Source: Haliotis rubra
Taxonomy: Eukaryota
Length of the DNA: 64,000 bases
Assembly: GCF_003918875.1 (NCBI RefSeq)
Contig: NW_025767431.1
Location: forward strand, 248,001 to 312,000
Direction: 5' to 3'
Shown here: positions 2,388 through 59,573 of the stretch, one piece after another
Layout: every line of letters starts with the position of its first letter
Position numbering within the stretch: position 1 is the first letter of the stretch
Notes under the pieces: model-generated
Seen by the model: only the letters and a program-made list of their open reading frames with translations
What the model was told of the DNA's origin: nothing
The model's database searches: none
Position numbers and translations under genes: made by a program

Positions 2388-2566
2388 AGAGGTTGCCCAC
2401 GGAAGAGGAGGAGAAATTTCCTGTTGCCTTCCCAGAGTTACCCTGCAGCGCCCGACCCGTCATCACATCTTCCGGAGGGGGTGACCTGTCCCCCGGCTCC
2501 CGACCCGTCACATCTTCCGGAGGGGGTGACCGATCCTCCAGCTCATCATTGTACACATCGGCTTGA
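2388..2566 (+). CDS. Terminal coding exon of an upstream TNFR-like paralog (gene 0); earlier exons not found in the window
   Basis: Acceptor ...ccataacacAG ends at 2387, phase 1. Translation RLPTEEEEKFPVAFPELPCSAR... aligns with the last exon of gene B (LPAEEETKFPTAFSDLPYSAR). Stop TGA 2564-2566. Confidence 0.75.
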
Positions 2567-12700: not shown

Positions 12701-13514
12701 CCATCTCGACTACAGCGTTGTCTCCCCTGCCTTATTCGTGGCTACAAGAAACCGGTAGAGTGCACCGAGTGTCACACAGATAGCCCCGGATCCGCATCAC
12801 TGACATCACTTAGTGGTTGTAAGTATGTGCTAAGTCAGGTTGTGTAAAGTCTGTTACTGAACAGTTCGGTTTAGTGCTTTAAAGTCCATGGTCATATAAC
12901 ACACATGTATATCATTCAAATGGGTCAGGCTGCACATGTATTGAATAATTCTATTGGTACTGAATAACATTACAATACAGTTCTAATTTTGAATGTAATA
13001 TACATATATTTTGACAGATGAATCATATTCACAAGTATTTAACAATGGATTTTAGTCTCATGTTGTGACGTTGGTAAGGAATACACATTTAGAAAGTGTT
13101 ATATACTTGGGATTACACTTTCTAAGGGAAGTACAGAATCTAGTACTCTGGGGGTTGAGTCCCATCCGGGATTCGAACCCACACTCTCAAAGTCAGCCAT
13201 CTAACCACCTGTGGAAGCCGCGATGGTTGAGTGGATGACTTTGTTGACACCAACCTAGTGTCCAGACTTAAACCTCTGACACTTGGGTCATCTAGAGCTA
13301 GTTTGTATGTAGCATCCTTGGAAATTACAAGAGTGATGAAGTAATTAGTCCGTGAATATTGTATATGCAGATTACCCTCGTACTTGTATGTGTTTCATTT
13401 GTAGACGAAGTACCCACCCCAGGGATTGCAACAATTCAAATGCCAAATCCAGAGTTTGGCTTGACAGAGCTTCAATACCAGCGTCAGTCATCAGGGGATG
13501 GCAGCAATGCCTAA
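9748..13514 (+). CDS. Gene A: type I membrane TNFR-like protein with two TACI/BCMA/Grindelwald-like CRDs, 234 aa; exons 9748-9934, 11226-11384, 12570-12818, 13405-13514
   Basis: Signal peptide MCLYRVTELFVIITLAVSVSVYG; CRD1 CPPGRYLDPVTNNCDDCGDICEHADIQGTQADCQRLC; CRD2 CPSDQYYDSAISRCDYCSVICDNHVIQGTTAQCKEKC; TM LVITICCILGLCLVLVSVYGLMVCFC; tail contains PVECTE. GT-AG introns, all phase 1; spliced frame open (705 nt). Confidence 0.85.
10156..10567 (-). mobile_element. SINE family A interrupted by a + strand insertion (10293-10549), intron 1 of gene A
   Basis: SINE body 10156-10292 resumes at 10550-10567; taggcta is duplicated around the insert. Confidence 0.8.
11666..12447 (+). mobile_element. 5'-truncated LINE (CR1/L2-group ORF2 C-terminus) in intron 2 of gene A
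   Basis: SFLPDTVRLWNCL...SRLRLGCSDLN...CSCG..EDP.HYFF.C zinc knuckle; AATAAA near the end; 10-bp TSD cagatgatat at 11656-11665 and 12448-12457. Confidence 0.85.
13075..13240 (-). mobile_element. SINE family B fragment(s), intron 3 of gene A
   Basis: gggattacactttc...aagtacagaatctagtact...ggattcgaacccacactctc matches family B in reverse. Confidence 0.65.
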
Positions 13515-17254: not shown

Positions 17255-19139
17255 ATGACAATAGGTATGTGCCGGTTGCTGGTGTCAGGACTTCTGTGGG
17301 GTAGCTACGCCTGTCTCGTTTACAGCTCTGAGGAGTGTCCCATAGGGACATACAGGGACTTTGGTTCTGGAAACTGTGACCCATGTTCAGATATATGCCA
17401 GTATATGAAGATAAAGGGAACTGAAGACGACTGCCGGAAATACTGTCCCGGTATGAATGTGTTATTTATATTTAGATTTAAGTCTATCCTGTTGGGAGTT
17501 CTGCCTACAGTTGAGTATGAACAAGATGAAAGTGTAACTATCATTGCCATGAACTACAGGTCCTTTAAAAGTTAATTTCCTTCTTTTATTAACCACGTTT
17601 CTTATCATCTCGTTCGCCCGATTTCGATACGATGTATATTTTGACTCTCAACATAGTATGCATATACAATGGAGGTTTCCTCGTCTCCACAAAAGATGAG
17701 TAAAGAGGGTAAAAACGAAATTCGACGGAAATAGTTTATCCCGACTCCACTTTATATATTTCTTGTGTTGCAGTTGACATTTGACACGCAATTAGGGATA
17801 AAGTAAAGTGAGTAAGTTGAAATATAACTAATATGAAAGAGACGAGAGAGATTTCGAATGCATAATAAATACAAGTTGTAATAATTGCAGTCAATATAGG
17901 AGTGAGTATTACAGATGTAAATCTAAAAACTATTTTACTTTTGAAGTCAATACAATATAAAAACAGACTACATGTCGCCAACAACTGAAAGTAGATAACC
18001 ACACCAGGAACTATAGGGACTTAAAGACGGCTTTTGTTACCTGCATAGACCCTAGCTGGATTAACATCTTCCCTTCTGCTGTTGGCGAATATGAGACATT
18101 TAGCCATAGCTAAAACGAACACATATTCTACGAATGAAAATGTTACAGAAATAATACACTTTGAAAGACGTGGTCTCATGTGCACTCTCAGGAGGACATA
18201 GTGATAAAGAGTTCCAAACCGGGTACCTTGTCATGGATGCAATCGCGTTCTTTTACAGATGCCTACACACTGAACCTTGCGAGTGAATCGAAAGTTGGTA
18301 TGTGTCCTTTTCTTAATTTCTTATTATGACAAGAAATACACTATAATATAATCCCGCTATTCATAATTATGATGTTTCCCATGGTCATGCTTGTATTTGG
18401 GTTTTAGATACATCTAGAGGATAAGTATTGTCACATCAATGACAGATGTTCTACTTAAGAAGACAATGAATGTTCAGTTCTTGTAACATGTGTATGGTGC
18501 TTTCTGTTGGTATTCATAAACATAAAAGCACATGATTTATGAAGAGTGAAATGATGCTATTTCGTTTCACAAATAGGCAATAAAGATTGGACCAAGAAGA
18601 CAACAGGCGACGAGGGAAGCATTCTCCCTGTAGTACTCCCTGTGTTAGCAGCAGTAGTGGTGGTCAGTGTGGTGATCGGGATCGTCGTTTACCGTCGTCG
18701 GCGTGTCAGTCGCAGACAAAGACCTATTCAACCTATTCACGATGACACACTGGTAGAACTTCCTTCAATTCAATGCACTGAAGAATCCGACAGCAGCTTC
18801 CATGTAGTTCCAATAGGTAATACTCATTTGGGATGTATTAAAATCACATCATGCTGTTTTTATAAAGCCATTAGTACTTCTTATTGAGCAGTCTATGCTC
18901 TATAGGGAACACAAAACATACATTAATGATCATCCATGCATAACCGTTTGTTTTAAATCTAACACGCATGTAACTACTACATCTACATAAGGTACACAAA
19001 GTATTATTTACAATAATTATTGTTTTCAGAGGAACAACAGTTACCGCTACCAGCAGAAGAGGAAACCAAATTTCCCACGGCATTCTCTGATCTCCCCTAC
19101 AGTGCAAGATATGACACTACTCAGCACGGATCGTACTGA
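17255..19139 (+). CDS. Gene B: single-CRD type I TNFR-like receptor, 194 aa; exons 17255-17450, 18259-18297, 18577-18816, 19030-19139
   Basis: Signal peptide; CRD CPIGTYRDFGSGNCDPCSDICQYMKIKGTEDDCRKYC; 39-nt stalk micro-exon (ttttacAG / GTatgt); TM LPVVLPVLAAVVVVSVVIGIVVY followed by RRRR; tail PSIQCTEE and PAEEE. Phase-1 introns, 585 nt open. The micro-exon is the least certain part. Confidence 0.85.
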
Positions 19140-34633: not shown

Positions 34634-37473
34634 ATGGCGATAACGTCTCCGAGTTCCTTTGCTTGTTTCGCCCTGATTGTGGTGTTTGTGGAAGGGAGGG
34701 GCATTTGTCCCCCAGGGACATATTGGGACCACGCCCTTGGAAAGTGCGATCAGTGTTCTAGTATATGTAACTACATGGAACAACAAGGGACGGTCACGTC
34801 ATGTGAAAGCAATTGCCCAGGTTGGTAAAAAAATATCTGTTGTTCATCGTTTGACGAGTCAGTTGAAGTTTCTCTCCCTCGCGAGAGAGGCTTCAGTATA
34901 TATCCAATTCGATTTTTATTCATCGCGCCAGGGGTTTAGGTGGGGTCCAGGTGCTTTAAAATTCTGTCTGTCAAATTTGTCGAACATTACTCACACCGTG
35001 CTTTGCTTAAACAGACGTGACAATGTATGTCATTATGAATATGTATAATGTCTGTATGCATTTGCTCATCTTCGATGTAGGGAGGATTGAAACTTTTATC
35101 CCATTCGATGTCTATTCATTGCTGCGGAACGAAAGAGAGGGTCCACGTGGTTTCGGTCTGTCACAACATGGCTACCAGTTGAATGAGCCCTACATCGTGC
35201 GTTCTCAAACACGCGTGTTAATAAATGACACGACGTATGAACCCCAGTGGAGAATGAAAGGAGTTATTCAATTATATTTGTGTTATTCCTTGATTCACCA
35301 CAGGTCTAGTCTAAAGAAAATGATAGAACATTCACGAACATTCGCGAACCTGCCAAATATAGAGCTGACAAGTTACAGATGTCAGCCAATCGGCGGTTAG
35401 ATAACTCCACCTACCTTCCAATCAAAAGCTGCCTCTTTCCGCTCAAGCTGTATGCACGCCAAACAAGGGAATTAACTCGTGAAAGCCCCTTCAACAAGAC
35501 CGTGTGTCCCACTATTAAATGTTTAACCAGGATGCCTGGAGTTGTATAGATACAATTCGTTGTAAAATGATGAAAGTTCATTTTTTCTATCCTTCTCTTG
35601 GATATATGGCCAAATGCCATATTTCAACTGTGGCAGATATTTGTCCGTTCTTTTGGATTAAACCAATGCAATTCTAGAATTTACCCTGTCGATAACATTG
35701 ATCCATTTGTTTATAAAATCATTAAACCTTTATTTCCAAATCCTTAAGTGCATAAGACTCAAATTATCACACAAAATATACATGTGATACTACCACTGCT
35801 TACCACAACAACGTACGGAAACGAAATGTGACCCCAGTACACCAATCTGCTCTTATGAGGCGATCAAACTGCTCTATCCCTGAAGATCCGGGTTAGAACT
35901 GTCTCACAGTCCTCGAACCACACTATGTTCCCTTCCGCCAAGCCCGTCTACAATAAAGCAAGATATCCTCAGGTTCATCTGAATCTTCCTTTTCAGATGG
36001 ACTCCTTTTCAATTTAAATTAAAATTTCCATTAAAGTTTATATAATGAGAGACTAAACGTTAGTCTAGGTCACTGACGTGACTGGTGCATATCGTCGTAT
36101 CCCAAAAGCGAAGAGCTAAAAAGCAGAACTTCATGGTTAATCCAAGAACAAAAAATAAACTTACAACTATAAAATAACCCCGTTTGATTTCGAGGCAGAT
36201 TAGCCGACAGGTTTCATAAGAATTACGGTTTACACGAGGACCGGATGGTCAGGCTGATTGAATGCTGTTAACATCAGGGTCAAGTTCAAGCAAGATCCAA
36301 TTCCAAAGCTAAAATGATTTTTTTTTCGTTATTTCATCACAAATATTTCCACACATATCAATCACTTAGAAAGAGTGATTTTTTCTGTATGCGGTAGCAT
36401 TCGTTATCCGATTCGTAACAAAATACTATTTTCCCAGAGTCACTGTAAATACCAAGTAGAACTTGTATCCTGTATTAGTGCCTTTCGTGTTGCAGGTTAC
36501 AAATCTTCCCACGATGTGCCCCCGAAGCCTGAAGACATTGCACCTATCGAGAACAAGGACACTAAGTCGACAGACGGAGTCACGATTGGTGTGTCGGTGG
36601 CTGCCAGCATTATAATCATCAGTATTATTGCAGGAGCACTTCTCCTACGTCGTAGTCGACGGAGTCGTGCTGCAACAGTTCCATCTCAAATTCTGGACAC
36701 ATCAGCACCAATGCTGTCCACTGGACGTACGTATGCATTAAATATTGTACGGGTAATATGGTCCCGTTAATAGTGAGTAAGTATAGTTTTATGCCGCTTT
36801 TAGCGATATTCCAGCAATATCACTGCGGGGAACAAAAGAAATAAGCTTCACACATTGCACAATGTGGGGAATCGAACCCGGGTCTACGGCGTGACGAGCG
36901 AAAGCTTTCACCACTAGGCTACCCTACCGCCCCATTCACATTAATAGTTGCATGGAGATTGTATCTACTATATCATTTCGATCAGTTACATTAACCTGCA
37001 ATTACATTTATAATATATATTTGTATGACTTCTGCATTTCCTTTCTTTTAGCTGTTTAGCCTCAATTTTATCAGAGCTGACAAAAGCAGTGTGTTTATAA
37101 ACATCCCGTCAAAACCATTTGGATGAGTTTTCTGCAGGATTCTGTACAAAAACAACCAATACCGACTATGATTAAAATAAGTCCCCCTCATCTCTAAACT
37201 GGACGGGTGGTTGGACTCGTTGACTTGGTTGCTTGTGAAGGCAAGAGGAGTTAGGATACTGCTGACGGCGGTGTTCAACGCCACATTAACGAGTAAAGCA
37301 GTTCTAACCCTTTTTTAAAAAAATAGCGTGGTAAGTTTTTCTAGAATCTGATATCTGCTTGACTGCCAAAGTGATTACACGAGTTTCATTTTTTAGACGC
37401 GAGGGAAAACAGACAGGAGGAGCAAGACCATGAACTGGACCGAGGTATTCCAGTCAACGATGGTGCTCACTGA
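34634..37473 (+). CDS. Gene C: single-CRD type I TNFR-like receptor, 164 aa; exons 34634-34820, 36496-36726, 37397-37473
   Basis: Signal MAITSPSSFACFALIVVFVEG; CRD CPPGTYWDHALGKCDQCSSICNYMEQQGTVTSCESNC; TM VTIGVSVAASIIIISIIAGALLL followed by RRSRR. Last exon HARENRQEEQDHELDRGIPVNDGAH* is less certain. Phase-1 GT-AG introns, 495 nt. Confidence 0.8.
35898..36068 (+). mobile_element. Relative of the 26466-26653 element, intron 1 of gene C
   Basis: Shared ctgtctcacagtcc..gaaccaca, ctccttttcaatttaaat and gagactaa..tagtctag. Confidence 0.6.
36773..36933 (-). mobile_element. SINE family A, intron 2 of gene C
   Basis: Full-length match to family A. Confidence 0.85.
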
Positions 37474-45400: not shown

Positions 45401-48400
45401 ACTGAGCTAGCATGTACTACTGCCTCATGGTATCTCACTGAGCTAGCATGTCGAACTGCCTCATCGTTTCTCACTGAGCTAGCTTGTCCAACTGCCTCAT
45501 GGTATCTCACTGAGCTGCCTTTTTCAACGGCCTCATGATATCTCACTGAGCTAGCTTGTCCAACTGCCTCATCATATCTCACTGAGCTAGGATGTGCAAC
45601 TGTCTAATGATATGTCACCTAGCAAGTTTGTCCAACTGCCTCATGGTATCTCACTGAGCTAGCATGTTCAACTGTCTCATGGTATCTCACTGAGCTAGCA
45701 TGCTCAACTGTCTCATGGTATGTAATTGAGCTAGCATGTCTAACTGTATAATGATATCTCACTGAGCTAGCATGTCTAACTGTATCATGGTATCTCACTG
45801 AGGTAGCTTGCTCAACTGTATCATGGTATCTCACTGAGCTAGCATGTCCAACTGCCTCATGATATCACTGGGCTAGCATGTTCAACTGTCTAATGATATG
45901 CCAATGAACTAGCCTGTCCACCTGCCTCAAGGTTTAGATCTCACTGATCTAGCTTGTACAACTGCCTCAGGGTATCTGACTGAGTTAGCATGTCCAACTG
46001 CATGTTCAACTGCCTCATGGTATCTCACTGAGCTAGCTTGTTCAACTGCCTCATAGTGTCTCACTGAGATAGCATATCCTACTGCCTCATGTTTTTTCAC
46101 TAAGCTAGCACGTCCAACTGTATCATGATATGTCACTGAGCTAGCATGTGCAACTGTCTAATGATATGTCACTGAGCTAGCTTGTCCAACTGCCTTATGG
46201 TATCTCACTGAGCTTGCATGTTTAACTGCCTCATGGTTTTTTCAAGAAGCTATTATATCCAACAACCTCATGGTATCTCACTAAGCTAGCACGTCCAACT
46301 GACTAATGATATGTCACTGAGCTGGCATGTGCAACTGTTTCATGATTTCTCACTAAGCTAGCACTGCCTCATGGTTTCTCACTCAGCAAGCATGTCCAAC
46401 TGTCTACTGGTTTCTTACTAAGCGAGCATGTCCAACTGCCTACTGGTTTTTCACTGGGCTAGCATGTTCAACTTCCTACTGCTATCTAACTAAGCTAGCA
46501 TGTCGAACTGCCTCATGGTATCCCTATGAGCTAGCATGTCCAACTGCTTCATGTTTTCTCACTGAGCTAGCTTGTCCAACTGCCTCTCGATATCTAAATG
46601 AGCTATCATGTGCCACTGTCTAATGATATGTCAATGAGCTAGCTTGTCCACCTGCCTCATGATATCTCACTGAGCTAGCTTGTCCAACTGCCTCATGATA
46701 TCTCACTGAGCTAGCATGTGCAACTGTCTAATGATATGTCACCTAGCGAGCTTGTCCAACTGCCACATGGTATCTCACGGAGCTAGCATGTACAATTTCC
46801 TCATGGTATCTCACTGAGCTAGGATGCTCAACAGCCTCATGGTATCTCACTGAGCTAGCATGTCCAACTGCCTGATGGTATCTCACTCAGCTAGCATGTA
46901 CAACTGTCTCATAGTATCTCACTGGCTAGCATATACAACTGCCTCATGGTGTCTCAATGAGCTAGCATGTCCAACTGTCTCATGGTATCTCACTGAGCTA
47001 GCATGTCCAACTGCCTGATGGTATCTCACTGAGCTAGCATGTCCAACTGCCTCATGGTATCTCACTGAGCTTGCTTGTTCAACTACCTCATGGTGTCTCA
47101 CTAAGCTAGCATGTGCAACAGTCAAATGATATGTCACTGAGCTAGCACGTCCAACTTCTTCATTGTATGTCACTAAGCTATTATTTCTAACTGCCTCTCA
47201 TGGTTTTTCACTAAGCTGGCATATCCATCTACCTCATGGTATCTCACTAAGCTAGCACACCCAACTGTCTAATGATATGTCACTAAGCTAGCACGTCCAA
47301 CTGCCTCATGGTATGTCACTAAGCTATTATTTTTAACTTTGCCTCATGGTTTCTCACTAAGCTACCATCTCCAACTGCCTCATGGTTTCTTACTAAGCTA
47401 GCACTTCCAACTGTCTCTCATGATATGTCACTGAACTGACATGTGCAACTGTTTCATGATTTCTCACTAAGCTAGCTCTGCCTCATGGTTTCTCACTCAG
47501 CAAGCATGTCCAACTGCCTACTGGTTTCTAACTAAGCTAGCAAGTACAATTTCCTCATGGTATCTCACTGAGCTGCTCGTCACGCCAGGCCCGGGTTCGA
47601 TTCCCCACATGGGCACAATGTGTTAAGCCCATTTCTGGTGTCCCTCGCCGTGATATTGCTGGAATATTGCTAAAAGCGGCGTAAAACTAAACTCAGTCAG
47701 TCGGTCAGTCTCACTGAGCTAGGATGTTCAACAGCCTCATGGTATCTCACTGAGCTAGCATGTACAACTGTCTCATGGTATCTCACTGGCTAGCAGATAC
47801 AACTTCCTCATGGTGTCTCAATGAGCTAGCATGTCCAACTGTCTCATGGTTTCTCACTGAGCTAGCATGTTCAACTCTCTCATGGTTTCTCATTGAGCCA
47901 GCACGTCCAACTGTCTAATGATATGTCACTAAGCTAGCATGTCCAACTGCCTCATGGTATCTCACTGAGCTAGCATGTCCAACTGCCCTATGGTATCTGA
48001 CTGAGCTAGCATGTACAACTGCCTCATGCTATGTCACTGAAATAGCATGCTCAAGTCTGTCATGGTATCTCAGTGAGCTGCCTTGTTCAACTGCCTCATG
48101 ATATCTTTCTGAGCTAGCTCCTCCAACTGTTTCATGATATCTCACGGAGCTAGCATGTACAACTGTCTCATGGTATCTCACTGAGCTAGCATGCTGAACT
48201 GTCTCATGGTATCTAATTGAGCTAGCATGCCTAACTGTATCATGGTATCTCACTGAGATGCCTTGTTCAACTGCCTCATGGTATCTCATTGAGCTAGCAC
48301 GTCTAACTGTATCATGGTATCTCATTGAGCTGCCATGTTCAACTCCCTCATCGTATCTCACTGAGCTAGCTTGTCCAACTGCCTCATGATATCTCACTTA

Positions 48401-51400
48401 GCTAGCAAGTGCAACTGTCTAATGATATGTCATGAGCTAGCTTGTCCAACTGTCTCATGGTATCTCACTAAGATAGCATGTACGACTGCCTCATGGTATC
48501 TGACTGAGCTAGCATGTCCAACTGCCTGATGGTATCTCACTGAGCTAGCATGTCCCACTGTCTGATGGTATCTCACTGAGCTAGCATGTCCAACTGCCTG
48601 ATGGTATCTCACTGAGCTAGCATGTCCAACTGCCTGATGCTATCTCACTTAGCTCAAGTGCAACTGTCCTGAGCTGGCATGTCAACTGTCTCATGCTCAG
48701 GCTAGTATACAACTGTCTGGTGTCTCAATGAGCTATGTCCAACTGCCTGATGGTATCTCACTGAGCTAGCATGTCCAACTGCCTGATGGTATCTCACTGA
48801 GCTAGCATGTCCCACTGTCTGATGCTACTGATAGCTTGTTCAACTACCTCAAGGTGTCTCACTAAGCTAGCACGTCCAACTTCCTCACTGTACTTCAGTA
48901 AGCTATTATTTTTAACTGCCTCATGGTTTCTCACTAAGCTAGCATCCCCAACTGCCTCATGGTTTCCTACTAAGCTTGCACGTCCAACTGTCTCATGATA
49001 TGTCACTGAACTGGTATGTGCAACTGTTTCATGATTTCTCACTAAGCTAGCACTGCCACATGGTTTCTCACTCAGCAAGTATGTCCAACTGCCTACTGGT
49101 TTCTAACTAAGCTAGCATGTCCAACTGCCTACTGGTTTCTCACTGAGCTAACATGTTCAACTTCCTACTGCTATCTCACTGAGCTAGCATGTCCAACTGC
49201 CTCATGGTTTCCCACTGAACTAGCATGTTCAACTGTCTAATGATATGTCACGGAGCTAGCATGTCCAACTGCCTAATGTTTTCTCACTAAGCTAGCACGT
49301 CCAACTGTCCCATGATATGTCACTGAGCTAGCATGTTCAACTGTATCATGGTATCTCACTGAGCTAGCATGTTCAACTGTATCATGGTATCTCACTAAGC
49401 TGGCATGTTCATCTGTCACATGATATGTCACTGAGCTAGCATGTTCAACTGTACCATGGTATCTAATTGAGCTAGCCTTTCCAACTGCCTCATGGTATCT
49501 CACTGAGCTAGCATGTCCAAATGCCTCATCGTTTCTCACTGTGCTGCCTTGTTCAACTGCCTCATGATATCTCACTGAGCTAGCTTGTCAAACTGCTTCA
49601 TGATATCTCACTGAGCTAGTATGTGCAACTGTCTAATGATATGTCACCCAGCGAGCTTGTCCAACAGCCTCATGGTATCTCACTGAGCTAGGATGCTCAA
49701 CAGCCTCATGGTATCTCACTGAGCTACCATGTACAACTGTATCATGGTATCTCACTGAGCTAGCATGTCCAACTGTCTCATGGTATCTCACTGACCTAGC
49801 ATGTTCAACTGTCTAATGGTTTCTCACTGAGCTAGCACTCTCTAACTGTCTAATGATATGTCACTAAGCTAGTATGTCCAACTGCCTCATGGTTTCGAAC
49901 TAAGGTAGCATGTGCAACTGCCTCATTGTTACTTACTAAGCTAGCAGGTCCAACTGTCTAATGATATGTCACAGAGCTGGCATGTTCAAGTGTATCATGG
50001 TATCTCACTCAGCTAGCATGTTCAACTGTCTCATGATATGTCACTGAGCTAGCATGTCCAACTGCCTCATGGTATCCCACTGAGCTAGCATGTACAACTG
50101 CCTCATGGCATGTCACTGAGCTAGCATGCTCAACTCTCTCATAGTATCTCATTGAGCTAGCATGGCTAACTGTATCATGGTATCTCACTGAGCTAGCATG
50201 TCTAACTGTATAATGGTATCTCACTGAAATGCCTTGTTCAACTGTCTCATGGTATCTCATTCAGCTAGCATGTCTAACTTGAACATGGTATTTCACTGAG
50301 CTGCCTTGTTCAACTGCCTCATGGTTTCTCACTAAGTTAACACTGCCTCATGGTTTCTCACTGAACAACAAGCATGTGCAACTACCTACTGGTTTCTCAC
50401 TGTGCTAGCATGTCCAACTGCCTACTGGTTTCTCACTGGGCTAGCATGTTCAACTTCCTACGGTTATCTAACTAAGCTAGCATGTACTACTGCCTCATGG
50501 TATCTTACTGAAATAGAATGTTCAATTGCCTCATGGTATCTCACTGAGCTAGCATGTCCAACTGCCTCATCGTTTCTCACTGAGCTAGCATGTCCAACTT
50601 CCTCACGGTGTCTCACTAAGCTAGCACGTCCAACTGTCTCATGATATGTCACTGAGCTAGCATGTTCAACTGCCCGATGGTATCTCACTCAGCTGGCATG
50701 TTCAACTGTCTCATCATATGTCACTGAGCTAGCATGTTCAACTGCCTAATGATATCTCACTGAGCTAGCTTGGCCAACTGCCTCATGATATGTCACTGAG
50801 CTAGCAGGTCCAACTGTCTAATGATATGTCACTGAGCTAGCGTTTCGTTTCTAACGAAGCTAGCATGTTCAACAGCCTCATGGTATCTCACTGAGCTAGC
50901 ATGCCCAAATGCCTCATGGTTTCTCATTGAGCTAGCATGTACAACTGTCTCATGGTATCTCACTGAGCTAGCATGTCCAACTGTCTCATTGTTTCTCACT
51001 GAGCTAGCATGCCCAACTGTTTAATGATATGTCACTAAGCTAGCACGTCCAACTGTCTCATGATATGTCACTGAGCTAGCATGTCCAACTGCCTCATGGT
51101 ATGAGCTATCATGTCCAACTGCCTCATGGTAGCTAGCATGTTTAACTGCCTCATGGCATCTCAGTGAGCTAGCATGTCCAACTGCCTCATGGTATCTCAC
51201 TGCGCTAGCATGCCCAACTGCCTCAACTGCCTCATGGTGTCTCACTAAGCTAGCAGGTCCAACTGTCTCATGATTTCGCACTGAGCTAGCATTCTCAATT
51301 GTCTCATGTTATCTCACTGAGCAGCCATGTTCAACTGTCTCATGATATGTCACTGAGCTAGCATGTCCAACTGCCTCATGATATGTCACTGAGCTAGCAT

Positions 51401-51517
51401 GTTCAACTGCCTCATGGTATGTCACTGAGCTTGCATGTTTAACTGCCCCATGGTATTTCACTGAGCTGGCGAGTCGAGCTGCCTCATGATATCTCACTGA
51501 GCTAGCATGTTAAACTG
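42437..51517. repeat. 36-bp satellite array (ctagcatgtccaactgcctcatggtatctcactgag)n, ~250 copies
   Basis: Continuous 36-nt period; minus-strand ORFs show the 12-aa repeat VRYHEAVGHASS broken by stops. Confidence 0.97.
47575..47708 (+). mobile_element. SINE family A inserted in the satellite
   Basis: 12-bp TSD tctcactgagct at 47563-47574 and 47709-47720. Confidence 0.9.
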
Positions 51518-52203
51518 AATTCTCTTGTTTGCAAGAAAAAATCAGCTTAAGTCCGGACCAATACAAATAGCCATCCCACCCACACACACAGGGACGCGCG
51601 CCTTTATGGCGATAAGGCCACAGATGTGCAGACGCGGTCATCTTAATACTGAAATCTTTGTTTGGCATTTTTATTTGAAACTGTACCGCAAAATGAACGT
51701 GAAGGAGTTAACATTCTCCAACTGGATGCACTTCTGGAGCATCTTAACTTAAAACACACAATTTTGGTGCAAGGTCAGATTTAGGTCAGATTTGCAGAAG
51801 TTAAGATAAATTGTTTCAAAGCACTAACATTGCAAATGTTTAAGTAGCACAAAACGGTACACCTGTAACGCATGACTTGAATACATGTCACTCAACAATA
51901 ACCTTATTTTCACTTGTGACATTATATTCCGTAATCACTCTTAGATAGTTTGTGATTTCATAAATGCACCCCCTTCCCTCTACCCCGAGCCGTATCCCTG
52001 CACCCCCTGTCCCGTCACTTATTCAAATGTTGCTGTCTGTCACCTATCCAAAGCTAACCATATACGAGTTTCGACTTGCTCTAGGGCACACCTCATCTCC
52101 ATTTGTCCAATCAGGACGCACAATCTATGAACGTGGTTCATTCATAACATCACACACAATATACCAGCATTGTTGACTTCCCTCAGATGTGTTTCCGACA
52201 AGG

Positions 52204-53752
52204 ATGAAAGTACTGTCTTGGTTGGCTTTTCTATGGGCTTTCAGTGTATCCGATGGAAGAAAAGCATGTTCACCTGGAAGATATTGGGACTCTGGACTGG
52301 ATAAGTGTGATCTATGTTCTTCTATATGTGACTTTATGGAACAACAAGGAACTGCCAAAGCATGTCAAGAAAGTTGTCCTGGTCAGTAACATTTAATAAC
52401 GGTAATTTTCAACGGTATTTATTTGATTCATGTTAATTACGTATATACTCCTCATTGACGGTTTCGTAGCATGGCACTTAATGATAAGAGTGGAAATGAA
52501 AACCACGTGTTTGCTGTCAAAACATGGCGGTCAATGGACGAGAGAAAAGCTGACATATTTACAGAAAGGGACATAACTCAGGAAGGACTATTGTCACTAT
52601 AACGATGCAAAATCAACCAGCTCTATTGTGTAATATATGGTTTAAGCATTTTAAAAAACGTTTTATTTATAAAATCATTTTTGTTACGTATGTTATCATA
52701 TTATATTATAAAAGATAAACCTGCGAGCGTGTTGCTGTCCTTGCACCATGACTAAGATTCAGTTTAAATATACCCTTGTAAACATGTTTCAAAGAGCAAA
52801 CATTAATCATAGCTGTATTCAGTGAGCACGCTTATGGGTTCACGTAGGATGTTTGGCCAGTAGAGAATAGGAATTATTCTCTATGGCGGAAATTTATTAT
52901 CTGTTATATATATTTCATTACAGATTACAAATCGGTGGCTGATGCAAATCAAGCGAATGAACAATCAATCGTTAACGGTACAAGCATGATTGTGCCAGTG
53001 GTTGTATGTGCCATTGTTGGTGTGATCTGTAGTATTATTGTAGCCGGGTTTCTCCTTCGTCGGCATCGTCAACGACACACTGATGCACCATCTGACGAGC
53101 CCACCCCACAACCGCCACCTCTACCTCACTCATCAGTAACATACGTGGCTTTACCTATTCATACTCAGACGGAGGACACTGCAACATCTGCCTCGTCTAT
53201 AGGTACGTCATTAACTACGACATTTGACAAGATAAGATCACAACTTTCTAAATGAAGTAAAGGAATGTTATTTTTTACAACGAATTGGTAAGATGATATA
53301 TGTTGAAATGTCGACAGAATTTGACAAATTGAATAATGATATCAACATAGAATGTCAACTTCTGTCAAGCGATATACTAGTCATGACGTCACAATGGATA
53401 ATTGCTATGACGTCATGCTCAGTAACAACAATGATTTAACAAGCATGTTCAGATATATGATGCTTAACCAAAAGATAGTTCATGATACATGCCAGGAGGG
53501 CGAAAGCTTGAGGTTAATAATTTACTAAATAAGTAAATAATTTACCGTCTTTTTAATTTTTTTACATATCTTTGTTTTTATATAGATTGTAGTGGATAAT
53601 GCCTAAACATGTTTAAATACAACATTCGGTGTGTTTTTGTCTCCATAGGAGCATCTGCAGACCGACGGGAAGGCATAGAAGCGAATTTAATGGGTTACCC
53701 AGACCTTCCAGACCGATTTGAACCAATCGGTGACGACATCTCACCACGCTGA
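52204..53752 (+). CDS. Gene D: single-CRD type I TNFR-like receptor with ITIM-like tail, 186 aa; exons 52204-52381, 52924-53202, 53649-53752
   Basis: Signal MKVLSWLAFLWAFSVSDG; CRD CSPGRYWDSGLDKCDLCSSICDFMEQQGTAKACQESC (closest to gene C); NGT sequon in stalk; TM IVPVVVCAIVGVICSIIVAGFLL followed by RRHR; tail VTYVAL and GYPDLP. Phase-1 introns, 561 nt. Confidence 0.85.
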
Positions 53753-54482
53753 TGAGGACTCTGACCAGGATGGGATACATTTTAATTGGTGACATTATTG
53801 ACTTGGTCATAACACAGGATGATGGAACAGATTCAAGATTCCGCTATTGTGCATGCTGCTATCAAGCTGATCTTCCAGTGTACAGGAAAGTTTTTAGGAT
53901 TAATTCGTTTGGTAGAAACATAAATGTATTCTCAAAAATAAATTGCAGCCACAGTCGAGATAGATTTAAAAGAACCCAATATATTACACAATGTATGGAC
54001 GTCTGTGGTAATATGTGTGAATAGAGACATTATGTTAAAGTATGTGTTTGTTGACATTTGAATGAATGTGAAGTCTTTGTAAACGTTTAAATAGTGTGTA
54101 TCATCAGGCTGAAAGGTTCGGGAGTGCATTTGATAGGCGACTTGGCGTATGATCAGAAAGAGATGTTTGCTTTTGTATTTTAATGTTTCTTTTCATGAAC
54201 AATGCCAAGTGGCATTTGATTCTCGTTCACAGGAAGTGTTTTAGAAATATTCTTAATTTTTGTGTATGTATTTATGTATTCTTTTGATTTTTAAACAAAA
54301 GCTGGTAATCATTTAAAAGGATGTTATACCTTCATTCCACAACAGTTACAGTAATGCTAGTGACCAAAACTGCATTCAAAATCTATTTTGATACCGTGTA
54401 ACTACATAGTATTTCTAACTTTTCTACAAATTGTGTAAAACAACATGTGTACTTTTGTCCTATTTACTCTTTACAGAAAAAT

Positions 54483-54610
54483 GGTTGGTTTGTTGTTTAA
54501 CGCTACTCTCAGCAGTATTCCAGCTATAAGGCGGTAAATAATCGAGTCTGGATCAGACAACCCAGTGATCTACAGCAGGAGCATCGATCCACACAATTTG
54601 GATGCGATGT
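54483..54610 (-). mobile_element. SINE family C 3' fragment
   Basis: ctcagcagtattccagctata..taatcgagtctggatcagacaacccagtgatc. Confidence 0.7.
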
Positions 54611-55184
54611 TTGCAGAAAATGATTTAATGATGTTAATTGCACAAACCGTTATGGCATGAGAAAGTGATTACAAACAAATACACTTCCCAATCAAAATAA
54701 CAGACGAAGGGCAAAAGGGGCGACGCACCTCCATTTCCATGCAATATTGATACAGCTTTAGTCAACTGCATTTGTTCAGTGCTTTTCTATTGCACGGTTA
54801 GGTATATGTTCTTATAATATATTACATGTTCAATCGTTACATTTGTCATTGTCATATATCATTATATCACTCGTTAGATATAAAAATAAAAAAATAAAAT
54901 AAACAGACTCTATTGTCTTATTTTGCAGTTGAAAAAACCCAAACAAATCGGTTACGTTTCCTTCAATCGTGTGAGTCAAATATACTATAATGTAGTGTCT
55001 GAGATATGCCATTTACAGTTGAATGTACCTAGGCCGTTACGTCACTGTAAGTAGGTAAGAGCGTATTATCAAGTACAATACCTCAGTAGCGGGTCAGCCA
55101 AGTCATTTGAGACTTCCATTCACTCTGACAAGACGACCAACCGCATTAGTGGCTTCAAACTTAATCTTGAACGACAGTATTTTA

Positions 55185-58100
55185 ATGATGGGTCTCGGAA
55201 GTAGTCTTATTGTCATAATAGTATTATTCAGTGTTAGAGGATATGAGTTTTGCGATATCGGCTCATATTTTGACCCAGTAATTCATAGGTGTGATTTGTG
55301 TAGTAATATATGTGATAACATGGATTCAACGAATACCTATGAGGACTGCCAACGTAACTGCCCAGGTAGGTAAATGCTACATTAAATAAAAGTCATAAAT
55401 ATATCAAACAAAACGAACGTCTAACGTAATGTTCTAGAACTCTGAAAACTAAAATAGATATTTCATTGTCGTCAGTTCATGCATATTCATGAACTATATA
55501 TGATCGGCCAGTTCAGACCAGATTCACTGAATCCATAACATATGGTATCCATGATATAGAAGGCAATGCAACAGCCGAAAAGAGGAGATACATTCTTGAA
55601 ACAGACATTCATTTCTATCAAATGACTAAAAAATATTATGACTTGATGATTCCTGAAAATGATTCCATTGTAACTGCAAGATATGTTGGGAGTGGGGTGG
55701 ATATAAAAGGGTGTCCGGACAATAGACTATATTTGAGAACTATATCTTAGTTGTGCTAGATCGCATACTGATATGGACATAATATTCTTTTTATCGGTCG
55801 TTTTGGTTTAGAAAAAACATACTTCCTGGTCGACATTAATGCCCCAGTCACACATAGTCCTCACCCCCATCCACGTGTGCATAGACGCAGTTTATGTACC
55901 TGTGATGCTGCAACATTTTACCTGAAAGTACATGGCGGCTGCGGTTATATTTGTACTTACTGAACATTGATCTTCAAAGTCGTAGCTGTGCAGATGGGTA
56001 TTTATCCCGCCTAACGCCATTTTGCTTTCTAAAAGTAGGCTATCCGACGCAGGTCACAGTCTGGCAGTCGTTAGATAATATGCCGGGCCTTTCAAAGCAG
56101 ACAAATGTTTCGCTACGTTAGGTTTTGAACTCATGAGATGCGGGCGTTACAGAGTTAACTATAAAGTTCTGTACATTTTGATGTTGTTCATAAGCGCATA
56201 TTATAAGTGTTACACATATTTTATTCTTTCTTTAAATTAATAATTTGTATACATATTTGCGGGACTGGGAGTGTGTGGAGAGAGGGAGGGTGGTGGACGA
56301 GGAGGAGAATACATGTATAACCTCAGTACACGGTATATTCTGTTGTCAAGATTGCTGAAGATGTGGTTGATGTGATATTTGAAGGGGTCAATAATTGTAA
56401 TTAGCGACTTTGTACGTAATATTACGTCTTCAGGTCGATACGGAATGGAGCGATAAGGAAGCATAGTGATTAAGGCCCTGTTATGATTCGCACGGGTAAA
56501 ATGTGTGAAGCCCAATCTTAATCAGCGTTCGAAAATTAGGCTCGAAGCCGAATGAAACCCACACAGGCTCACAGCTTTGGTTTTCTGCAGGTGCTTATGG
56601 CTCTGTTTGTTGTGAATTACTTATACGGTAGCTAGAATATACGCCTGCACATTCTGATCAGGACCCACAACTATTTCTGGTTCTGGGACCTTAGGGCCTG
56701 CTGCCTTTCGAGGTTAGGGGCAAACACTGATCTTGATTCCTCTTCTGTGATATCACTGTAACTTTTGGCGGCGTTAAACCATAATAACCACAATCAGTGT
56801 GTGGATGTAAACCAGCGAAATACAGGATACATGTTATTGTCTTTATTTAGATTACGGTAAAGCGAAAGGGTGTTCGGACGATCAATACTACGACCAGAAC
56901 GTCGGGAGATGTGACTCGTGTGCGGAGCTCTGTCACGGAGAAAACATTCAAGACACAACGGAAGAATGCAAAGCCAAGTGCCCCAGCTGTAAGTCATCTG
57001 CATAAATCGAACAAACCAATAAAACCACCAAAGCACCAGCTAATTACACATCAGGAAGAAATATTCCTAATATATACTTCCCATCAAAAGTTTAGACTCA
57101 CAAGTGTAAATATAGCCACTTACTTCAAGCAACAATACTAAACTAGATTTTGCAAAATATTCCATACTGTTTAAAGGTACTGTTTACACATGAACTGATG
57201 CATTGTAAAACAACTTCGTAATGTTGAAATCATTATTGTAATGAAAATAATAAAACTCTGTGAAAATTCTTAACAAAACTTTACACCAAACGCAGCTGTT
57301 CACATGCACGATATTTGCACATGTTTTTCAACAATTTGATGCATGATCCTCGTGCAATTAATCGGCATAAGGTTTGCAGTTGGTTCCCCCACGCTAGTGG
57401 AGCAATCTATCGTCGATGTAACCATATATATATATATATGTATATATGTACATTGTGACGTTATGACAAAGTGACGTCATATCATATCTATTTAACTGTA
57501 ATCACTTCTCCCTGAAGATAAAATTGAAACATGTTGGAGAAGATCCGTGTCGTGTGATTATTTCAGAAACTTCTTCTTATATATGTACTACTGTACGCTC
57601 GGTATTCTCATCACTTTCTTTCTTTATATATATACACATATAGTGAGTGTTTTAAGTGAGTCTAAACTTTTCATGGGAAGTATATATGTAGAACACTGAA
57701 TAATTTGGTTAGTTGTTTTGATTTTTAACGCCGCACTCAGCAATATTCCAGCTATATGGCGGCGGTCTGTAAATAATCGAGTCGAGTCTGGGCCAGACAA
57801 TCCAGTGATGAACAGCAAGAGCAGTTGGGATGCGATGACATGTGTCAACCACGTCACAGAGTCTGATCTACATGGGTAAGAAAAATTGAACAAAGGTATC
57901 GCTTTAGAAGGTAATACATGTAAACTGAAAGCATTATGTTTTATCTGTACTGTGTAGAAATGTATATACATGTACACAGAAACATACCTTTAATATTATT
58001 TGAAACAATGAAGAATTTCTTTTAAAATAGTACAACACCTCTCATATCTTCCGCATCATAGACCTCCAATAATTCATGTATATTTATGTGTGGGAGCCTA

Positions 58101-59573
58101 TGCCACAATTATTGCATCTGTGTATAATGATCTCACTAATACCTTTGAAACACAACATCACCGAAGCTTTAAACAAATATTACAGTTCACCGTGGTGGAC
58201 CTGGTTCTGGTTCAGGAAGGTCGACGGGGCCAATTATTGCAACAGCAGTGACATGTTCCATCACCGTTATGGCAATTGTCATAGTTCTTCTACTTTGCCG
58301 GACCCAGCGTCTCCCATCAGTCTTACAGAGGTGTCGCCTGTATCCAGGAAAAGGCTATACTCAACCACAACAGTGCAGCGATGGAAGCGATACTTCAGGA
58401 TCTAACTTTTCTTCCGTCAGTAAGTACTTTCCTCTGTTTTAACTGGCAATTACTCAAAGATATCCCTCTACTGGGGACAGGGGATGTATGATGTACAGGG
58501 AATTTACTCAACTCATTGTCTTCTTATCTCTCATACAGGTCCAAGGGTATATCAGATTAATCAAGATTAATTAAGTCTCATTCACATCATAGTCACTGCT
58601 CCAACAGCCCCATCCTCCATACTTCAGCCTTATCCCCCATACTTCAGCTTCATCCCCATACTTTAGCTTCATCCCGAAACTTCAACCTCATCCCCCATAC
58701 TTCAGCCTCATCCCCCATACTTCAGCTTCATCCCCATACTTCAGCCTCATCCCCCATACTTCAGCTTCATCCCCATACTTCAGCTTCATCCCCAAACTTC
58801 AGCCTCATCACCCATACTTCAGATTCATCCCGTACTTCAGCTTTATTCCCCAAACTTCAGCCTCACCCATCCTTCAGTCTAATCCCCATATTTTGGCTTC
58901 ATCCCCATACTTCAGCCTCGTCCTCCATACTTCAGCCTCATCCCAATATTTCAGCCTCATCCTCCATACTTCAGCTTCATCCCCCATACTTCAGCTTCAT
59001 CCACAAACTTCAGCCTCACCCATACTTCAGCTTCATTCACCATACTTCAGCCTCATCCCTATACATCAGCCTCATCCCCCATACTTCAGCTTCATCCCCA
59101 TACTCCAGCTTCATCACCCATACTTCGGCCTCATTCCCCATACTTCAGCCTCACCCATACTTCAGCTTCATTCCCCATACTTCAGCCTCACTCATACTTC
59201 AGCTTCATCCCCATACTTCAGCCTCATTCCCAATACTTCAGCTTCATTCCCTATAAGGACATCTCTTGAAAAAGAAAAAACACTCAACAATCATGTCTGT
59301 GTTAAAAGGACAACAATAAAAAGAAGACAGCTTAGCAGCTTAAATTAAGAGACTTCAGAGCTCCTTAACACTAGAGGGTCCCCACATCAACTGATTGTAT
59401 TACAGTTACCTTTTGTGTGAGACTATTTTACAGTCAAATGGTCATATGTCCTTTCAGGTGACGTTCATCCACAAGTAACTGATGCCACTGCAGTTGTCAT
59501 GACAGAACAAGAGGGGTTTCCTGATTTACATACACAAGCTCGTCATAGTATAGTGGATGTTCTTATACACTAA
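55185..59573 (+). CDS. Gene E: two-CRD type I TNFR-like receptor, 222 aa; exons 55185-55365, 56851-56988, 58186-58419, 59458-59573
   Basis: Signal MMGLGSSLIVIIVLFSVRG; CRD1 CDIGSYFDPVIHRCDLCSNICDNMDSTNTYEDCQRNC; CRD2 (absent from the ORF track) CSDDQYYDQNVGRCDSCAELCHGENIQDTTEECKAKC; TM IIATAVTCSITVMAIVIVLLLC; tail RLPSVLQRC..GY.QPQQCSD homologous to gene A. Phase-1 introns, 669 nt. Confidence 0.85.
57708..57878 (-). mobile_element. SINE family C, internally deleted, intron 2 of gene E
   Basis: gccgcactcagcaatattccagctatatggcggcggtctgtaaataatcgagtc matches family C. Confidence 0.8.
58610..59250. repeat. ~19-21-bp minisatellite (ccccatacttcagcctcat)n in intron 3 of gene E
   Basis: About 30 visible units. 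Confidence 0.95.

What the first reader, a model, noticed from the sequence alone, without database searches (positions are those of the whole stretch)
53136..53707. Gene D has a canonical ITIM where its paralog has a TRAF site: a possible paired activating/inhibitory system
D tail TYVALPIHTQTED aligns with B TLVELPSIQCTEE. D has Tyr forming VTYVAL, an exact (I/V/L/S)xYxx(L/V) ITIM, and lacks the QCT core; a second YPDL lies 36 residues later, suiting tandem-SH2 phosphatases. D's CRD is most similar to C's (shared YWD..L.KCD.CSSIC..MEQQGT), and C carries PxQxxD. Similar ectodomains with opposite tails in one cluster is the paired-receptor logic of Ig and lectin families, unusual for TNFRs.
Basis: partly seen in the sequence, partly recalled or inferred. 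Interest (0 to 1): 0.75.

Follow-up and report, generated by a model that had tools for sequence, protein, structure and literature searches.

The report
Abalone TNF-receptor tail with ITIM-like tyrosine
The motif is real: an expressed blacklip-abalone gene for a small Grindelwald/BCMA-type TNF receptor has a conserved V-T-Y-V-A-L in its tail, but the tail follows the same two-box plan as its neighbours and the second tyrosine is normally a phenylalanine, so an inhibitory paired receptor is an untested and rather unlikely guess.

Summary
Observation confirmed. Gene D is Haliotis rubra LOC124259287, 186 aa, three coding exons. Spliced RNA contigs verify the model. VTYVAL lies at 53136-53153 and YPDL at 53696-53707, 36 residues apart.

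The head is a six-cysteine CRD of the TACI/BCMA/Grindelwald type. This scan met the same receptor kind elsewhere in this genome (s1-325280, s1-335046).

The reading is only partly supported.
- For: V-x-Y-V-A-L-P is invariant in D orthologues of H. asinina, H. cracherodii and a third abalone.
- Against the tandem motif: YPDL is D's version of a family-wide C-terminal box, G/A-F/Y-P/S-D/E-L. That position is Phe in paralogues B, E and Z. It reads Phe (53697 A>T) in reads of another individual or sister species.
- Against opposite tails: the first Tyr is shared with the Z lineage (VTYIPS), which fails the ITIM pattern. It sits just upstream of a TRAF-like H-x-Q-x-E-D core that D keeps.
- Against enrichment: ITIM-pattern matches in family tails are no commoner than chance (5 against 2.5, P=0.11).
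- Against pairing: D and C heads are 62% identical, and orthologues are closer than paralogues. C's PxQxxD is absent in H. asinina.

Most likely D is an ordinary adaptor-docking TNFR paralogue. A true ITIM: about 0.12.

The parts
52204..52381 (+). Gene D coding exon 1: signal peptide (52204-52257) and the six-cysteine CRD (52267-52377). RNA contigs begin about 52155-52171, which marks the 5'UTR.
   Evidence: The CRD profile hits TACI and BCMA. The AF2 model has pLDDT 92.9.
52924..53202 (+). Gene D coding exon 2: stalk, transmembrane helix (52986-53057), basic stop-transfer stretch (53058-53078), Pro-rich stretch and box 1.
53136..53153 (+). VTYVAL, residues 131-136. It matches the ITIM pattern and also YxxPhi (YVAL). 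It is invariant as V-x-Y-V-A-L in the D orthologues.
   Evidence: No nucleotide difference lies here in RNA contig X3 record 11, because all four of that piece's differences are listed elsewhere.
53154..53177 (+). PIHTQTED, residues 137-144: the TRAF-like core of box 1. It is H-x-Q-x-E-D, close to PxQxxD but with His at position 0.
53649..53752 (+). Gene D coding exon 3 with the stop codon. The 3'UTR runs on to about 54835.
53693..53710 (+). GYPDLP, residues 168-173: D's version of the family-wide box 2, G/A-F/Y-P/S-D/E-L. The variant 53697 A>T turns Tyr169 into Phe.
18747..18785 (+). Gene B box 1, TLVELPSIQCTEE. It has Leu where D has Tyr, and a SIQCT core that fits (P/S/A/T)xQxT.
19080..19097 (+). 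Gene B box 2, AFSDLP. It has Phe at the position of D's Tyr169.
59514..59531 (+). Gene E box 2, GFPDLH. It has Phe at the position of D's Tyr169.
2426..2443 (+). Box 2 (AFPELP) in the last exon of a Z-type gene. The rest of that gene lies upstream of the window.
34634..34825 (+). Gene C exon 1 with the CRD most similar to D's (23 of 37 residues).
36681..36698 (+). Gene C PSQILD, which fits PxQxxD. It is not conserved in the H. asinina orthologue. C's short tail lacks box 1 and box 2.

Best explanation
Gene D (H. rubra LOC124259287) is an expressed, genus-conserved member of a large tandem family of small type-I TNF receptors. Its single head is a beta-hairpin followed by a helix-loop-helix CRD of the Grindelwald/BCMA/TACI type.

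Its 82-residue tail follows the same plan as paralogues B, E and Z:
- a basic stop-transfer stretch;
- a Pro-rich stretch;
- box 1, a hydrophobic or Tyr residue, then P, then a Q-containing acidic core;
- a Ser/Thr-rich linker and an acidic stretch;
- box 2, G/A-F/Y-P/S-D/E-L.

VTYVAL is the D-lineage form of the start of box 1, and YPDL is the D-lineage form of box 2. The most likely mechanism is inferred by analogy with Grindelwald, BCMA, TACI and Fn14. A TNF-type ligand clusters the receptor, and the two boxes dock cytosolic adaptors of TRAF type for box 1 and of unknown type for box 2. D would then signal in the same direction as its neighbours. On this reading the fit to the ITIM pattern is a by-product of a Tyr that belongs to box 1.

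Shown here: the gene model, expression, CRD type, motif conservation and tail homology. Inferred: ligand binding, adaptor docking and the direction of signalling.
For: - Gene and splicing.
- CRD type. The Cys spacing is C-x12-C-x2-C-x3-C-x11-C-x3-C in 53 domains. The profile hits TACI and BCMA at E about 1e-3 and Grindelwald at E 0.09, with nothing else above them. The AF2 model has pLDDT 92.9, a hairpin plus helix-loop-helix. The top Foldseek hits are BCMA, Fn14 and Grindelwald. The C-x3-C-x11-C-x3-C half equals Grindelwald's C2 module (PMC8024323).
- Tail homology with B, E and Z over the full length.
- Box 2 occurs in 9 of 44 family representatives against 0.04 expected from shuffles, mostly with Phe.
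- Tyr169 reads Phe in organism A.
- The box 1 Tyr is shared with Z, as VTYIPS, VKYIPS and VTYVRR, followed by HAQCED.
- More distant family members carry canonical PxQET or PxQxxD at this place: YPIQET, PHQET and YPIQAED.
- ITIM-pattern matches are not enriched: 5 against 2.5 expected, P=0.11.
Against: - V-x-Y-V-A-L-P is invariant in all five D-lineage sequences, including the +3 Leu. The tail overall evolves fast, with dN/dS about 0.5. Some constraint therefore acts on exactly the ITIM/YxxPhi positions in this lineage.
- D' (P0002) has I-G-Y-P-D-L, so it matches the ITIM pattern twice.
- D's core has His, not P/S/A/T, at position 0 of the TRAF consensus, so TRAF docking is itself unproven.
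- No binding or signalling data exist for any member of this family.
Confidence: 0.5

Rival explanations
1. YVAL is a YxxPhi sorting signal. It would bind the mu2 subunit of AP-2 and drive clathrin-dependent uptake of the ligand-bound receptor. Uptake would tune or enable signalling rather than invert it.
For: - Y-V-A-L fits YxxPhi, lies about 28 residues from the membrane in a disordered tail, and is invariant in D orthologues.
- Precedents. [quoted passage not shown] Fas Tyr291 is tied to clathrin-dependent endocytosis (PMC4778973). TNFR1 has a YQRW internalisation motif (own knowledge).
Against: - The same Tyr in the Z lineage is followed by IPS or VRR, which fail YxxPhi. Conservation of the Tyr across D and Z therefore needs another reason.
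- B has Leu at this position.
Confidence: 0.2
2. VTYVAL is a true ITIM. After phosphorylation by a Src-family kinase it recruits an SH2 phosphatase (SHP2 or SHIP) and damps signals from neighbouring TRAF-coupled paralogues that see the same ligand.
For: - The pattern match is exact and conserved in four species.
- D' has two pattern matches 36 residues apart.
- Molluscs use ITIM-to-SHIP2 signalling: oyster NCAM1 (PMC11841013).
- TNFR precedent: the Fas death-domain YxxL and SHP-1 (PMC4778973; Daigle 2002, cited in PMC3827506).
Against: - The second Tyr is Phe in paralogues and in organism A.
- The pattern is not enriched in the family.
- The Tyr is shared with Z, which fails the ITIM pattern.
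- D keeps the TRAF-like core and box 2.
- D and C heads are only 62% identical, with no concerted evolution.
- C's TRAF-type motif is not conserved.
- There is no evidence of phosphorylation.
Confidence: 0.12
3. The motifs have no specific function. The tail is a fast-evolving disordered linker, and the conserved runs reflect short divergence times and chance.
For: - Tail dN/dS is about 0.5. A 16-residue window around box 1 is not more constrained than the rest between H. rubra and H. cracherodii.
- Only two or three effectively independent lineages were sampled.
Against: - Box 2 recurs across distant gastropods far above chance: 9 against 0.04.
- The box 1 core is shared between the D and Z lineages.
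- The reading frame and splice phase are kept in all species.
Confidence: 0.1

Closest known systems
Drosophila Grindelwald (TNFR for Eiger; structures 6zsy and 6zt0)
   Same: - Small type-I receptor with one CRD built from a beta-hairpin and a helix-loop-helix.
- The second half has the identical spacing C-x3-C-x11-C-x3-C.
- It appears in both the sequence-profile and the fold hit lists.
- grnd homologues are already reported in molluscs (bioRxiv 10.1101/2024.07.27.603686).
   Different: - Sequence similarity is marginal (E 0.09).
- The abalone family is a tandem expansion of dozens of CRD exons, some genes with two or three CRDs.
- The tails are not comparable with the tools used here.
Human BCMA (TNFRSF17), TACI CRD2 (TNFRSF13B) and Fn14 (TNFRSF12A)
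   Same: - These are the best profile hits, at E about 1e-3, and the best fold hits, at rmsd about 1 A over 22-24 residues.
- They share the aromatic-Asp hairpin tip (YWD in D, YFD in BCMA) and the C-x2-C-x3-C spacing.
- They have short TRAF-docking tails without a death domain (own knowledge).
   Different: - The loop in the second module is 11 residues rather than 8.
- Pfam scores stay below the gathering cut-offs.
- The vertebrate ligands BAFF, APRIL and TWEAK have no known mollusc orthologues.
ITIM-bearing inhibitory receptors (KIR, LILRB, Siglec; oyster CgNCAM1)
   Same: A membrane receptor whose tail matches (I/V/L/S)xYxx(L/V/I). Mollusc ITIM-to-SHIP2 signalling exists (PMC11841013).
   Different: - The ectodomain is a TNFR CRD, not an Ig or lectin domain.
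- The second motif is a Phe/Tyr box.
- There is no evidence of phosphorylation or phosphatase binding.
- There is no near-identical activating partner.
Fas/CD95 death-domain tyrosines (Y232 and Y291, YxxL)
   Same: [quoted passage not shown] Tyr-based control of a TNFR is therefore not without precedent.
   Different: The Fas tyrosines lie inside a folded death domain. D has no death domain, and its Tyr lies in a disordered tail next to a TRAF-like core.

Membership tests
TNFR superfamily, Grindelwald/BCMA/TACI-type single CRD | Six cysteines spaced as a hairpin module plus a nested two-disulfide module (C-x3-C-x(8-11)-C-x3-C) | tested here: met
   The spacing C-x12-C-x2-C-x3-C-x11-C-x3-C is invariant in 53 family domains. 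The Grindelwald C2 consensus is given in PMC8024323.
TNFR superfamily, Grindelwald/BCMA/TACI-type single CRD | Significant sequence similarity to known TNFR CRDs | tested here: inconclusive
   The family profile hits TACI and BCMA at E 0.0013-0.03 and Grindelwald at E 0.09, and the top 13 hits are all of these. Single-exon Pfam hits (TACI-CRD2, TNFR_c6, Fn14) fall below the gathering scores. One Littorina relative carries UniProt's name 'TNFR-Cys domain-containing protein'.
TNFR superfamily, Grindelwald/BCMA/TACI-type single CRD | Fold: beta-hairpin followed by helix-loop-helix | tested here: met
   The AF2 model has pLDDT 92.9 with strands 7-10 and 15-18 and helices 19-23, 26-29 and 32-38. 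The top Foldseek hits are BCMA, Fn14 and Grindelwald, but E-values are not significant for a 42-residue domain.
TNFR superfamily, Grindelwald/BCMA/TACI-type single CRD | Type-I topology: signal peptide, ectodomain, one transmembrane helix, cytoplasmic tail | tested here: met
   Hydrophobic N-terminus at residues 1-18, a transmembrane helix at 81-104 followed by RRHRQRH, and an 82-residue tail.
TNFR superfamily, Grindelwald/BCMA/TACI-type single CRD | Binds a TNF-family ligand | not testable with these tools
   No binding test was run.
ITIM-bearing inhibitory receptor | (I/V/L/S)xYxx(L/V/I) in the cytoplasmic tail | tested here: met
   VTYVAL is at residues 131-136. The chance of a match in a shuffled D tail is 5.9%.
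ITIM-bearing inhibitory receptor | Motif conserved in orthologues | tested here: met
   V-(T/A)-Y-V-A-L occurs in H. rubra D and D', H. asinina, H. cracherodii and the DRR299178 abalone. Only about two or three lineages are independent.
ITIM-bearing inhibitory receptor | A second Tyr motif suited to tandem-SH2 phosphatases | tested here: not met
   Tyr169 aligns with Phe in B, E and Z. It reads Phe in organism A at 53697 A>T. Box 2 is mostly Phe across the family.
ITIM-bearing inhibitory receptor | Tyr phosphorylation, SHP or SHIP recruitment, and an inhibitory effect | not testable with these tools
   This needs wet-lab work.
Paired activating/inhibitory receptors | Near-identical ectodomains in the two partners, often kept alike by gene conversion | tested here: not met
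   D against C is 23 of 37 (62%). D rubra against D asinina is 33 of 37, and C rubra against C asinina is 31 of 37. The threshold itself comes from general knowledge of KIR, Ly49 and LILR.
Paired activating/inhibitory receptors | The partner carries a conserved activating signal that the inhibitory member lacks | tested here: not met
   C's PSQILD is absent in the H. asinina orthologue P0005, and C lacks boxes 1 and 2. D keeps both boxes that B, E and Z have.

The most novel reading that the evidence does not exclude
The box 1 tyrosine, conserved in the D and Z lineages directly upstream of a TRAF-like Q-x-E-D core, is a phospho-switch. When phosphorylated, it recruits an SH2 phosphatase as an ITIM in D, or blocks or redirects adaptor docking. 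That would give a Grindelwald-type invertebrate TNF receptor a tyrosine-based inhibitory mode. Tail-less C and two-box D would then act as a regulatory pair for one ligand.
Probability: 0.1. Interest if true: 0.6.

Novelty: new member of a known kind. Interest (0 to 1): 0.25.

Why it matters
If D really carried a working ITIM, it would be a rare case of tyrosine-phosphatase-based inhibition built into a TNF receptor. It would also show checkpoint-like regulation in the expanded TNF system of molluscs, which matters for abalone immunity and aquaculture disease.

As it stands, the useful results are more modest:
- a verified gene model and evidence of expression;
- orthologues in three further abalone genomes, two of them unannotated;
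- a two-box map of the tails of this receptor family, which tells experimenters which residues to mutate. One of these boxes is the unexplained G-F-P/S-D/E-L box.

Tried and rejected
- Word-indexed protein searches with exon 2 and with the tail alone found only D, D' and one Logan fragment. No annotated D orthologues exist in the database. They had to be dug out of flanks of neighbouring genes.
- H. asinina exon 3 lies beyond the fetched locus, so YPDL could not be checked there.
- Pfam on single exons gave only sub-threshold hits.
- Foldseek E-values are not significant for a 42-residue domain, so only the ranking is informative.
- A census of the whole 400-kb cluster was cut short. The half that was read shows no other tail matching the ITIM pattern.
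- I first aligned the Tyr of A and E (GYKKP, GYTQP) with D's Tyr133. The alignment puts them elsewhere, so this was dropped.
- Whether D' on contig C2382 is a second haplotype or a true duplicate was not resolved. Introns are 86-90% identical and gene order is syntenic.
- The identity of organism A is coded. Its DNA differs by about 3% from the window, so Tyr169Phe is either a polymorphism or a difference from a sister species.
- Complex prediction was not used. No binding claim is made, and an unphosphorylated peptide would not test an ITIM.

Full report
**1. What is at the coordinates**

The window is animal DNA with about 38% G+C and spliced genes. A six-frame search finds seven exons on the + strand that encode a six-cysteine domain. 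With transmembrane and tail exons and homologues, these assemble into five genes:
- A: two CRDs, 9748-13511.
- B: 17267-19136.
- C: 34634-37467.
- D: 52204-53752.
- E: two CRDs, 55185-59570.

The last exon of a further gene, here called Z, lies at 2387-2563.

Gene D has three coding exons: 52204-52381, 52924-53202 and 53649-53752. Both introns are GT-AG and phase 1. Its translation is identical to RefSeq 'uncharacterized protein LOC124259287 [Haliotis rubra]', 186 aa. The window is contig C2541:248001-312000 of a 1.378-Gb assembly.

**2. Expression and splicing**

Contigs of three small runs of coded organism A cover only the exons. They join 52380 to 52923 and 53195/53203 to 53642, then continue as a 3'UTR to about 54835. 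A genomic run of the same organism covers everything. The second junction is ambiguous by seven letters, because tctatag and tccatag end exon 2 and intron 2. It is compatible with the canonical cut 53202|53649 and gives the same protein. Two further gaps, 54200-54235 and 54475-54622, are also absent from the DNA contig. They are indels between individuals, not introns. D is therefore a real, spliced, expressed gene.

**3. The observation**

VTYVAL is residues 131-136 (53136-53153). YPDL is residues 169-172 (53696-53707). The two tyrosines are 36 residues apart. B has TLVELPSIQCTEE at 18747-18785, and C has PSQILD at 36681-36698. C's CRD is the closest paralogue of D's in the genome apart from the D' copy, at 23 of 37 residues. 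The ITIM pattern is short: 5.9% of shuffles of D's own tail contain a match.

**4. What kind of receptor it is**

An exhaustive HMMER search finds 50 relatives. The ten whose source was looked up are from Haliotis asinina, H. cracherodii and H. rufescens, the gastropods Gigantopelta, Batillaria and Littorina, and unnamed Logan and ENA assemblies. One Littorina member carries UniProt's name 'TNFR-Cys domain-containing protein'.

Fifty-three CRDs align with six invariant cysteines spaced C-x12-C-x2-C-x3-C-x11-C-x3-C and a nearly invariant Asp in an aromatic-Asp hairpin tip.
- A profile of them hits, in the whole PDB, first TACI and BCMA (E 0.0013-0.03) and then Drosophila Grindelwald (E 0.09).
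- AlphaFold2 gives a confident model, pLDDT 92.9, of a beta-hairpin followed by a helix-loop-helix.
- Its best Foldseek matches are BCMA, Fn14 and Grindelwald. E-values are not significant for so small a domain.
- The second half has exactly the spacing that Palmerini et al. give for Grindelwald's C2 module. They also describe the likeness of that fold to Fn14, BCMA and TACI CRD2 (PMC8024323).
- Pfam alone stays below threshold.

grnd homologues in molluscs are already reported (bioRxiv 10.1101/2024.07.27.603686). Earlier follow-ups of this scan reached the same classification for neighbouring parts of the cluster (s1-325280 and s1-335046). I tested it independently here.

The cluster is large. 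There are 49 exon matches, mostly on C2541, plus a syntenic copy on C2382. At least 25 CRD exons lie in the half of the 400 kb that I could read.

**5. Conservation of the two tyrosines**

No annotated D orthologue is in the protein databases. I found unannotated ones next to neighbouring genes:
- H. cracherodii: L014:6475-8556, 3.5 kb upstream of the E orthologue.
- H. asinina: L015:21772-22776, exons 1 and 2 only, 9 kb downstream of the C orthologue.
- A Logan contig of run DRR299178: L013, all three exons, followed by an E-like CRD.
- H. rubra itself has D' (P0002, LOC124254504) on C2382.

In all five sequences V-(T/A)-Y-V-A-L-P-(I/V)-H-x-Q is kept. In the four with exon 3, G-Y-P-D-L is kept.

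The weight of this is limited. The cracherodii and DRR299178 sequences are near-identical, and so are rubra and asinina. The tail evolves with dN/dS about 0.5, against 0.21 for the CRD. A 16-residue window around box 1 is not more constrained than the rest.

**6. The second tyrosine is not a tyrosine motif**

In the reads of organism A, position 53697 is T instead of A. That turns codon 169 from TAC to TTC, Tyr to Phe.
- All depth shows it in X2 and in the DNA run X5.
- The main contig shows it in X3, at 16.1 of 21.5.
- About half the depth shows it in X1.
- Neighbouring residues also change: D174A and R175Q.

Aligned tails put D's GYPDL opposite AFSDL in B, GFPDL in E and AFPEL in Z (coordinates). 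The pattern G/A-F/Y/M-S/P/A-D/E-L occurs in 9 of 44 family representatives, against 0.04 expected from shuffles, and is mostly Phe. YPDL is thus D's version of a family-wide, Phe-centred C-terminal box of unknown partner. This removes the 'tandem-SH2' argument. For fairness, D' has I at position -2, so it matches the ITIM pattern twice.

**7. The first tyrosine belongs to a shared box**

The tails of B, D, E and Z align over their whole length. Just after VTYVAL, D has PIHTQTED. The Z lineage has the same layout:
- H. rubra, L010: V-T-Y-I-P-S-P-V-H-A-Q-C-E-D.
- H. asinina, P0004: V-K-Y-I-P-S and the same core.
- A Logan fragment, P0045: V-T-Y-V-R-R.

The Tyr, the V/I at +1, the Pro, and H-x-Q-x-E-D are therefore shared by two paralogue lineages. 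Position +3, which defines an ITIM or a YxxPhi signal, is Leu only in D.

B has Leu for the Tyr, with S-I-Q-C-T-E, which fits (P/S/A/T)xQxT. From my own memory this resembles the TANK peptide PIQCTD; I did not check that here. More distant relatives carry canonical PxQET or PxQxxD at this place: YPIQET, PHQET and YPIQAED.

D's core differs from the TRAF2 consensus by His at position 0, so TRAF docking is plausible but unproven. It is not true, however, that D has a tail 'opposite' to its neighbours.

Two of the neighbours' motifs are themselves unstable:
- B's Gln is Pro in H. rufescens (P0052).
- C's PSQILD is replaced in H. asinina (P0005).

C in fact lacks both boxes, so it is the odd one out.

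**8. Pairing logic**

Classical paired receptors have almost identical ectodomains; that is general knowledge, not tested here. In this cluster:
- D against C: 62%.
- D asinina against C asinina: 70%.
- D rubra against D asinina: 89%.
- C rubra against C asinina: 84%.

The two genes have been separate since before these species split, and they show no homogenisation. ITIM-pattern matches in the tails of the family number 5 against 2.5 expected (P=0.11).

**9. What remains possible**

Molluscs do use ITIM-to-SHIP2 signalling, as in oyster NCAM1 (PMC11841013). A TNFR can be controlled through a tail tyrosine in a YxxL context, as in Fas Y291 with Src kinases and SHP-1 (PMC4778973; Daigle et al. 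2002, cited in PMC3827506). The invariance of Y-V-A-L in the D lineage fits an ITIM, a YxxPhi sorting signal, or a lineage-specific shape of the adaptor site. Sequence alone cannot separate these. My estimates:
- Shared adaptor-docking box, with the ITIM fit coincidental: 0.5.
- Sorting signal: 0.2.
- True ITIM: 0.12.
- No specific function: 0.1.

**10. Verdict**

The gene is an ordinary though uncharacterised member of a known receptor kind. The paired activating/inhibitory reading is mostly not borne out by the tests that could be run. One element, a conserved V-x-Y-V-A-L, deserves a simple mutational test.

Noticed in passing
window 53693-53710, 19080-19097, 59514-59531, 2426-2443; also P0019, P0027, P0028, P0042, P0046: A family-wide C-terminal box, G/A-F/Y-P/S-D/E-L, often preceded by acidic residues, recurs in gastropod Grindelwald-type receptors. 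It occurs in 9 of 44 representatives against 0.04 expected by shuffling. I know of no partner or name for it.
   Followed up: partly
window 42437-51517: A 36-bp minisatellite of about 250 copies (74-80% matches) fills most of the gap between genes C and D. It creates many spurious ORFs on the minus strand.
   Followed up: partly
L014:7631-8212 (H. cracherodii): A 116-bp unit is repeated five times at 98% identity. The unit holds the 3' end of D's exon 2 (the stretch encoding VAYVALPVHSQC...) plus the splice donor and the start of the intron. 116 is not a multiple of 3, so the later copies are out of frame. This is a very recent duplication of exactly the box 1 segment.
   Followed up: partly
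G000:C2382:636000-699000 against C2541 (window); L002: A second, syntenic copy of the C-D-E part of the cluster lies on another contig. D and D' show no synonymous difference in exon 1 (one change in 177 nt), while the stretch spanning intron 1 (51901-53301) is about 90% identical and the intron 2/3'UTR stretch 86%. This could be a divergent haplotype, or a duplication with gene conversion. It is unresolved.
   Followed up: partly
window 36495-37467 (gene C): C's tail is short and lacks both box 1 and box 2. Of the five genes it looks the least able to signal, and it may be a decoy-like member.
   Followed up: no
L013:1480-1560 (DRR299178 abalone): At the position of D's exon 2 donor, the GT is GA in this species. 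A GT 12 nt downstream, in the same phase, probably replaces it and would add four residues.
   Followed up: partly
L014:6475-8556 and L015:21772-22776: D orthologues exist in the H. cracherodii and H. asinina assemblies. No corresponding protein is in the databases searched, so they appear unannotated.
   Followed up: yes
G000:C2541:163304 (L024) and P0011: Another paralogue's tail carries S-P-I-Y-(M/A)-N-G and D-Y-V-(L/I)-N-G-L-L, conserved between H. rubra and P0011, a database relative whose source was not looked up. These are Y-x-N contexts, like Grb2-type SH2 sites, so tyrosine motifs occur elsewhere in the family.
   Followed up: no
window 54364-54757 and 56925-57900: Depth here is very high in both the DNA and RNA runs (10^5-10^7 summed word depth), with many joints. 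These are high-copy interspersed repeats in D's 3'UTR flank and in an intron of E.
   Followed up: no
P0052 (H. rufescens B orthologue): The Gln of B's S-I-Q-C-T core is Pro in H. rufescens. It is kept in H. rubra, H. cracherodii and H. asinina.
   Followed up: partly
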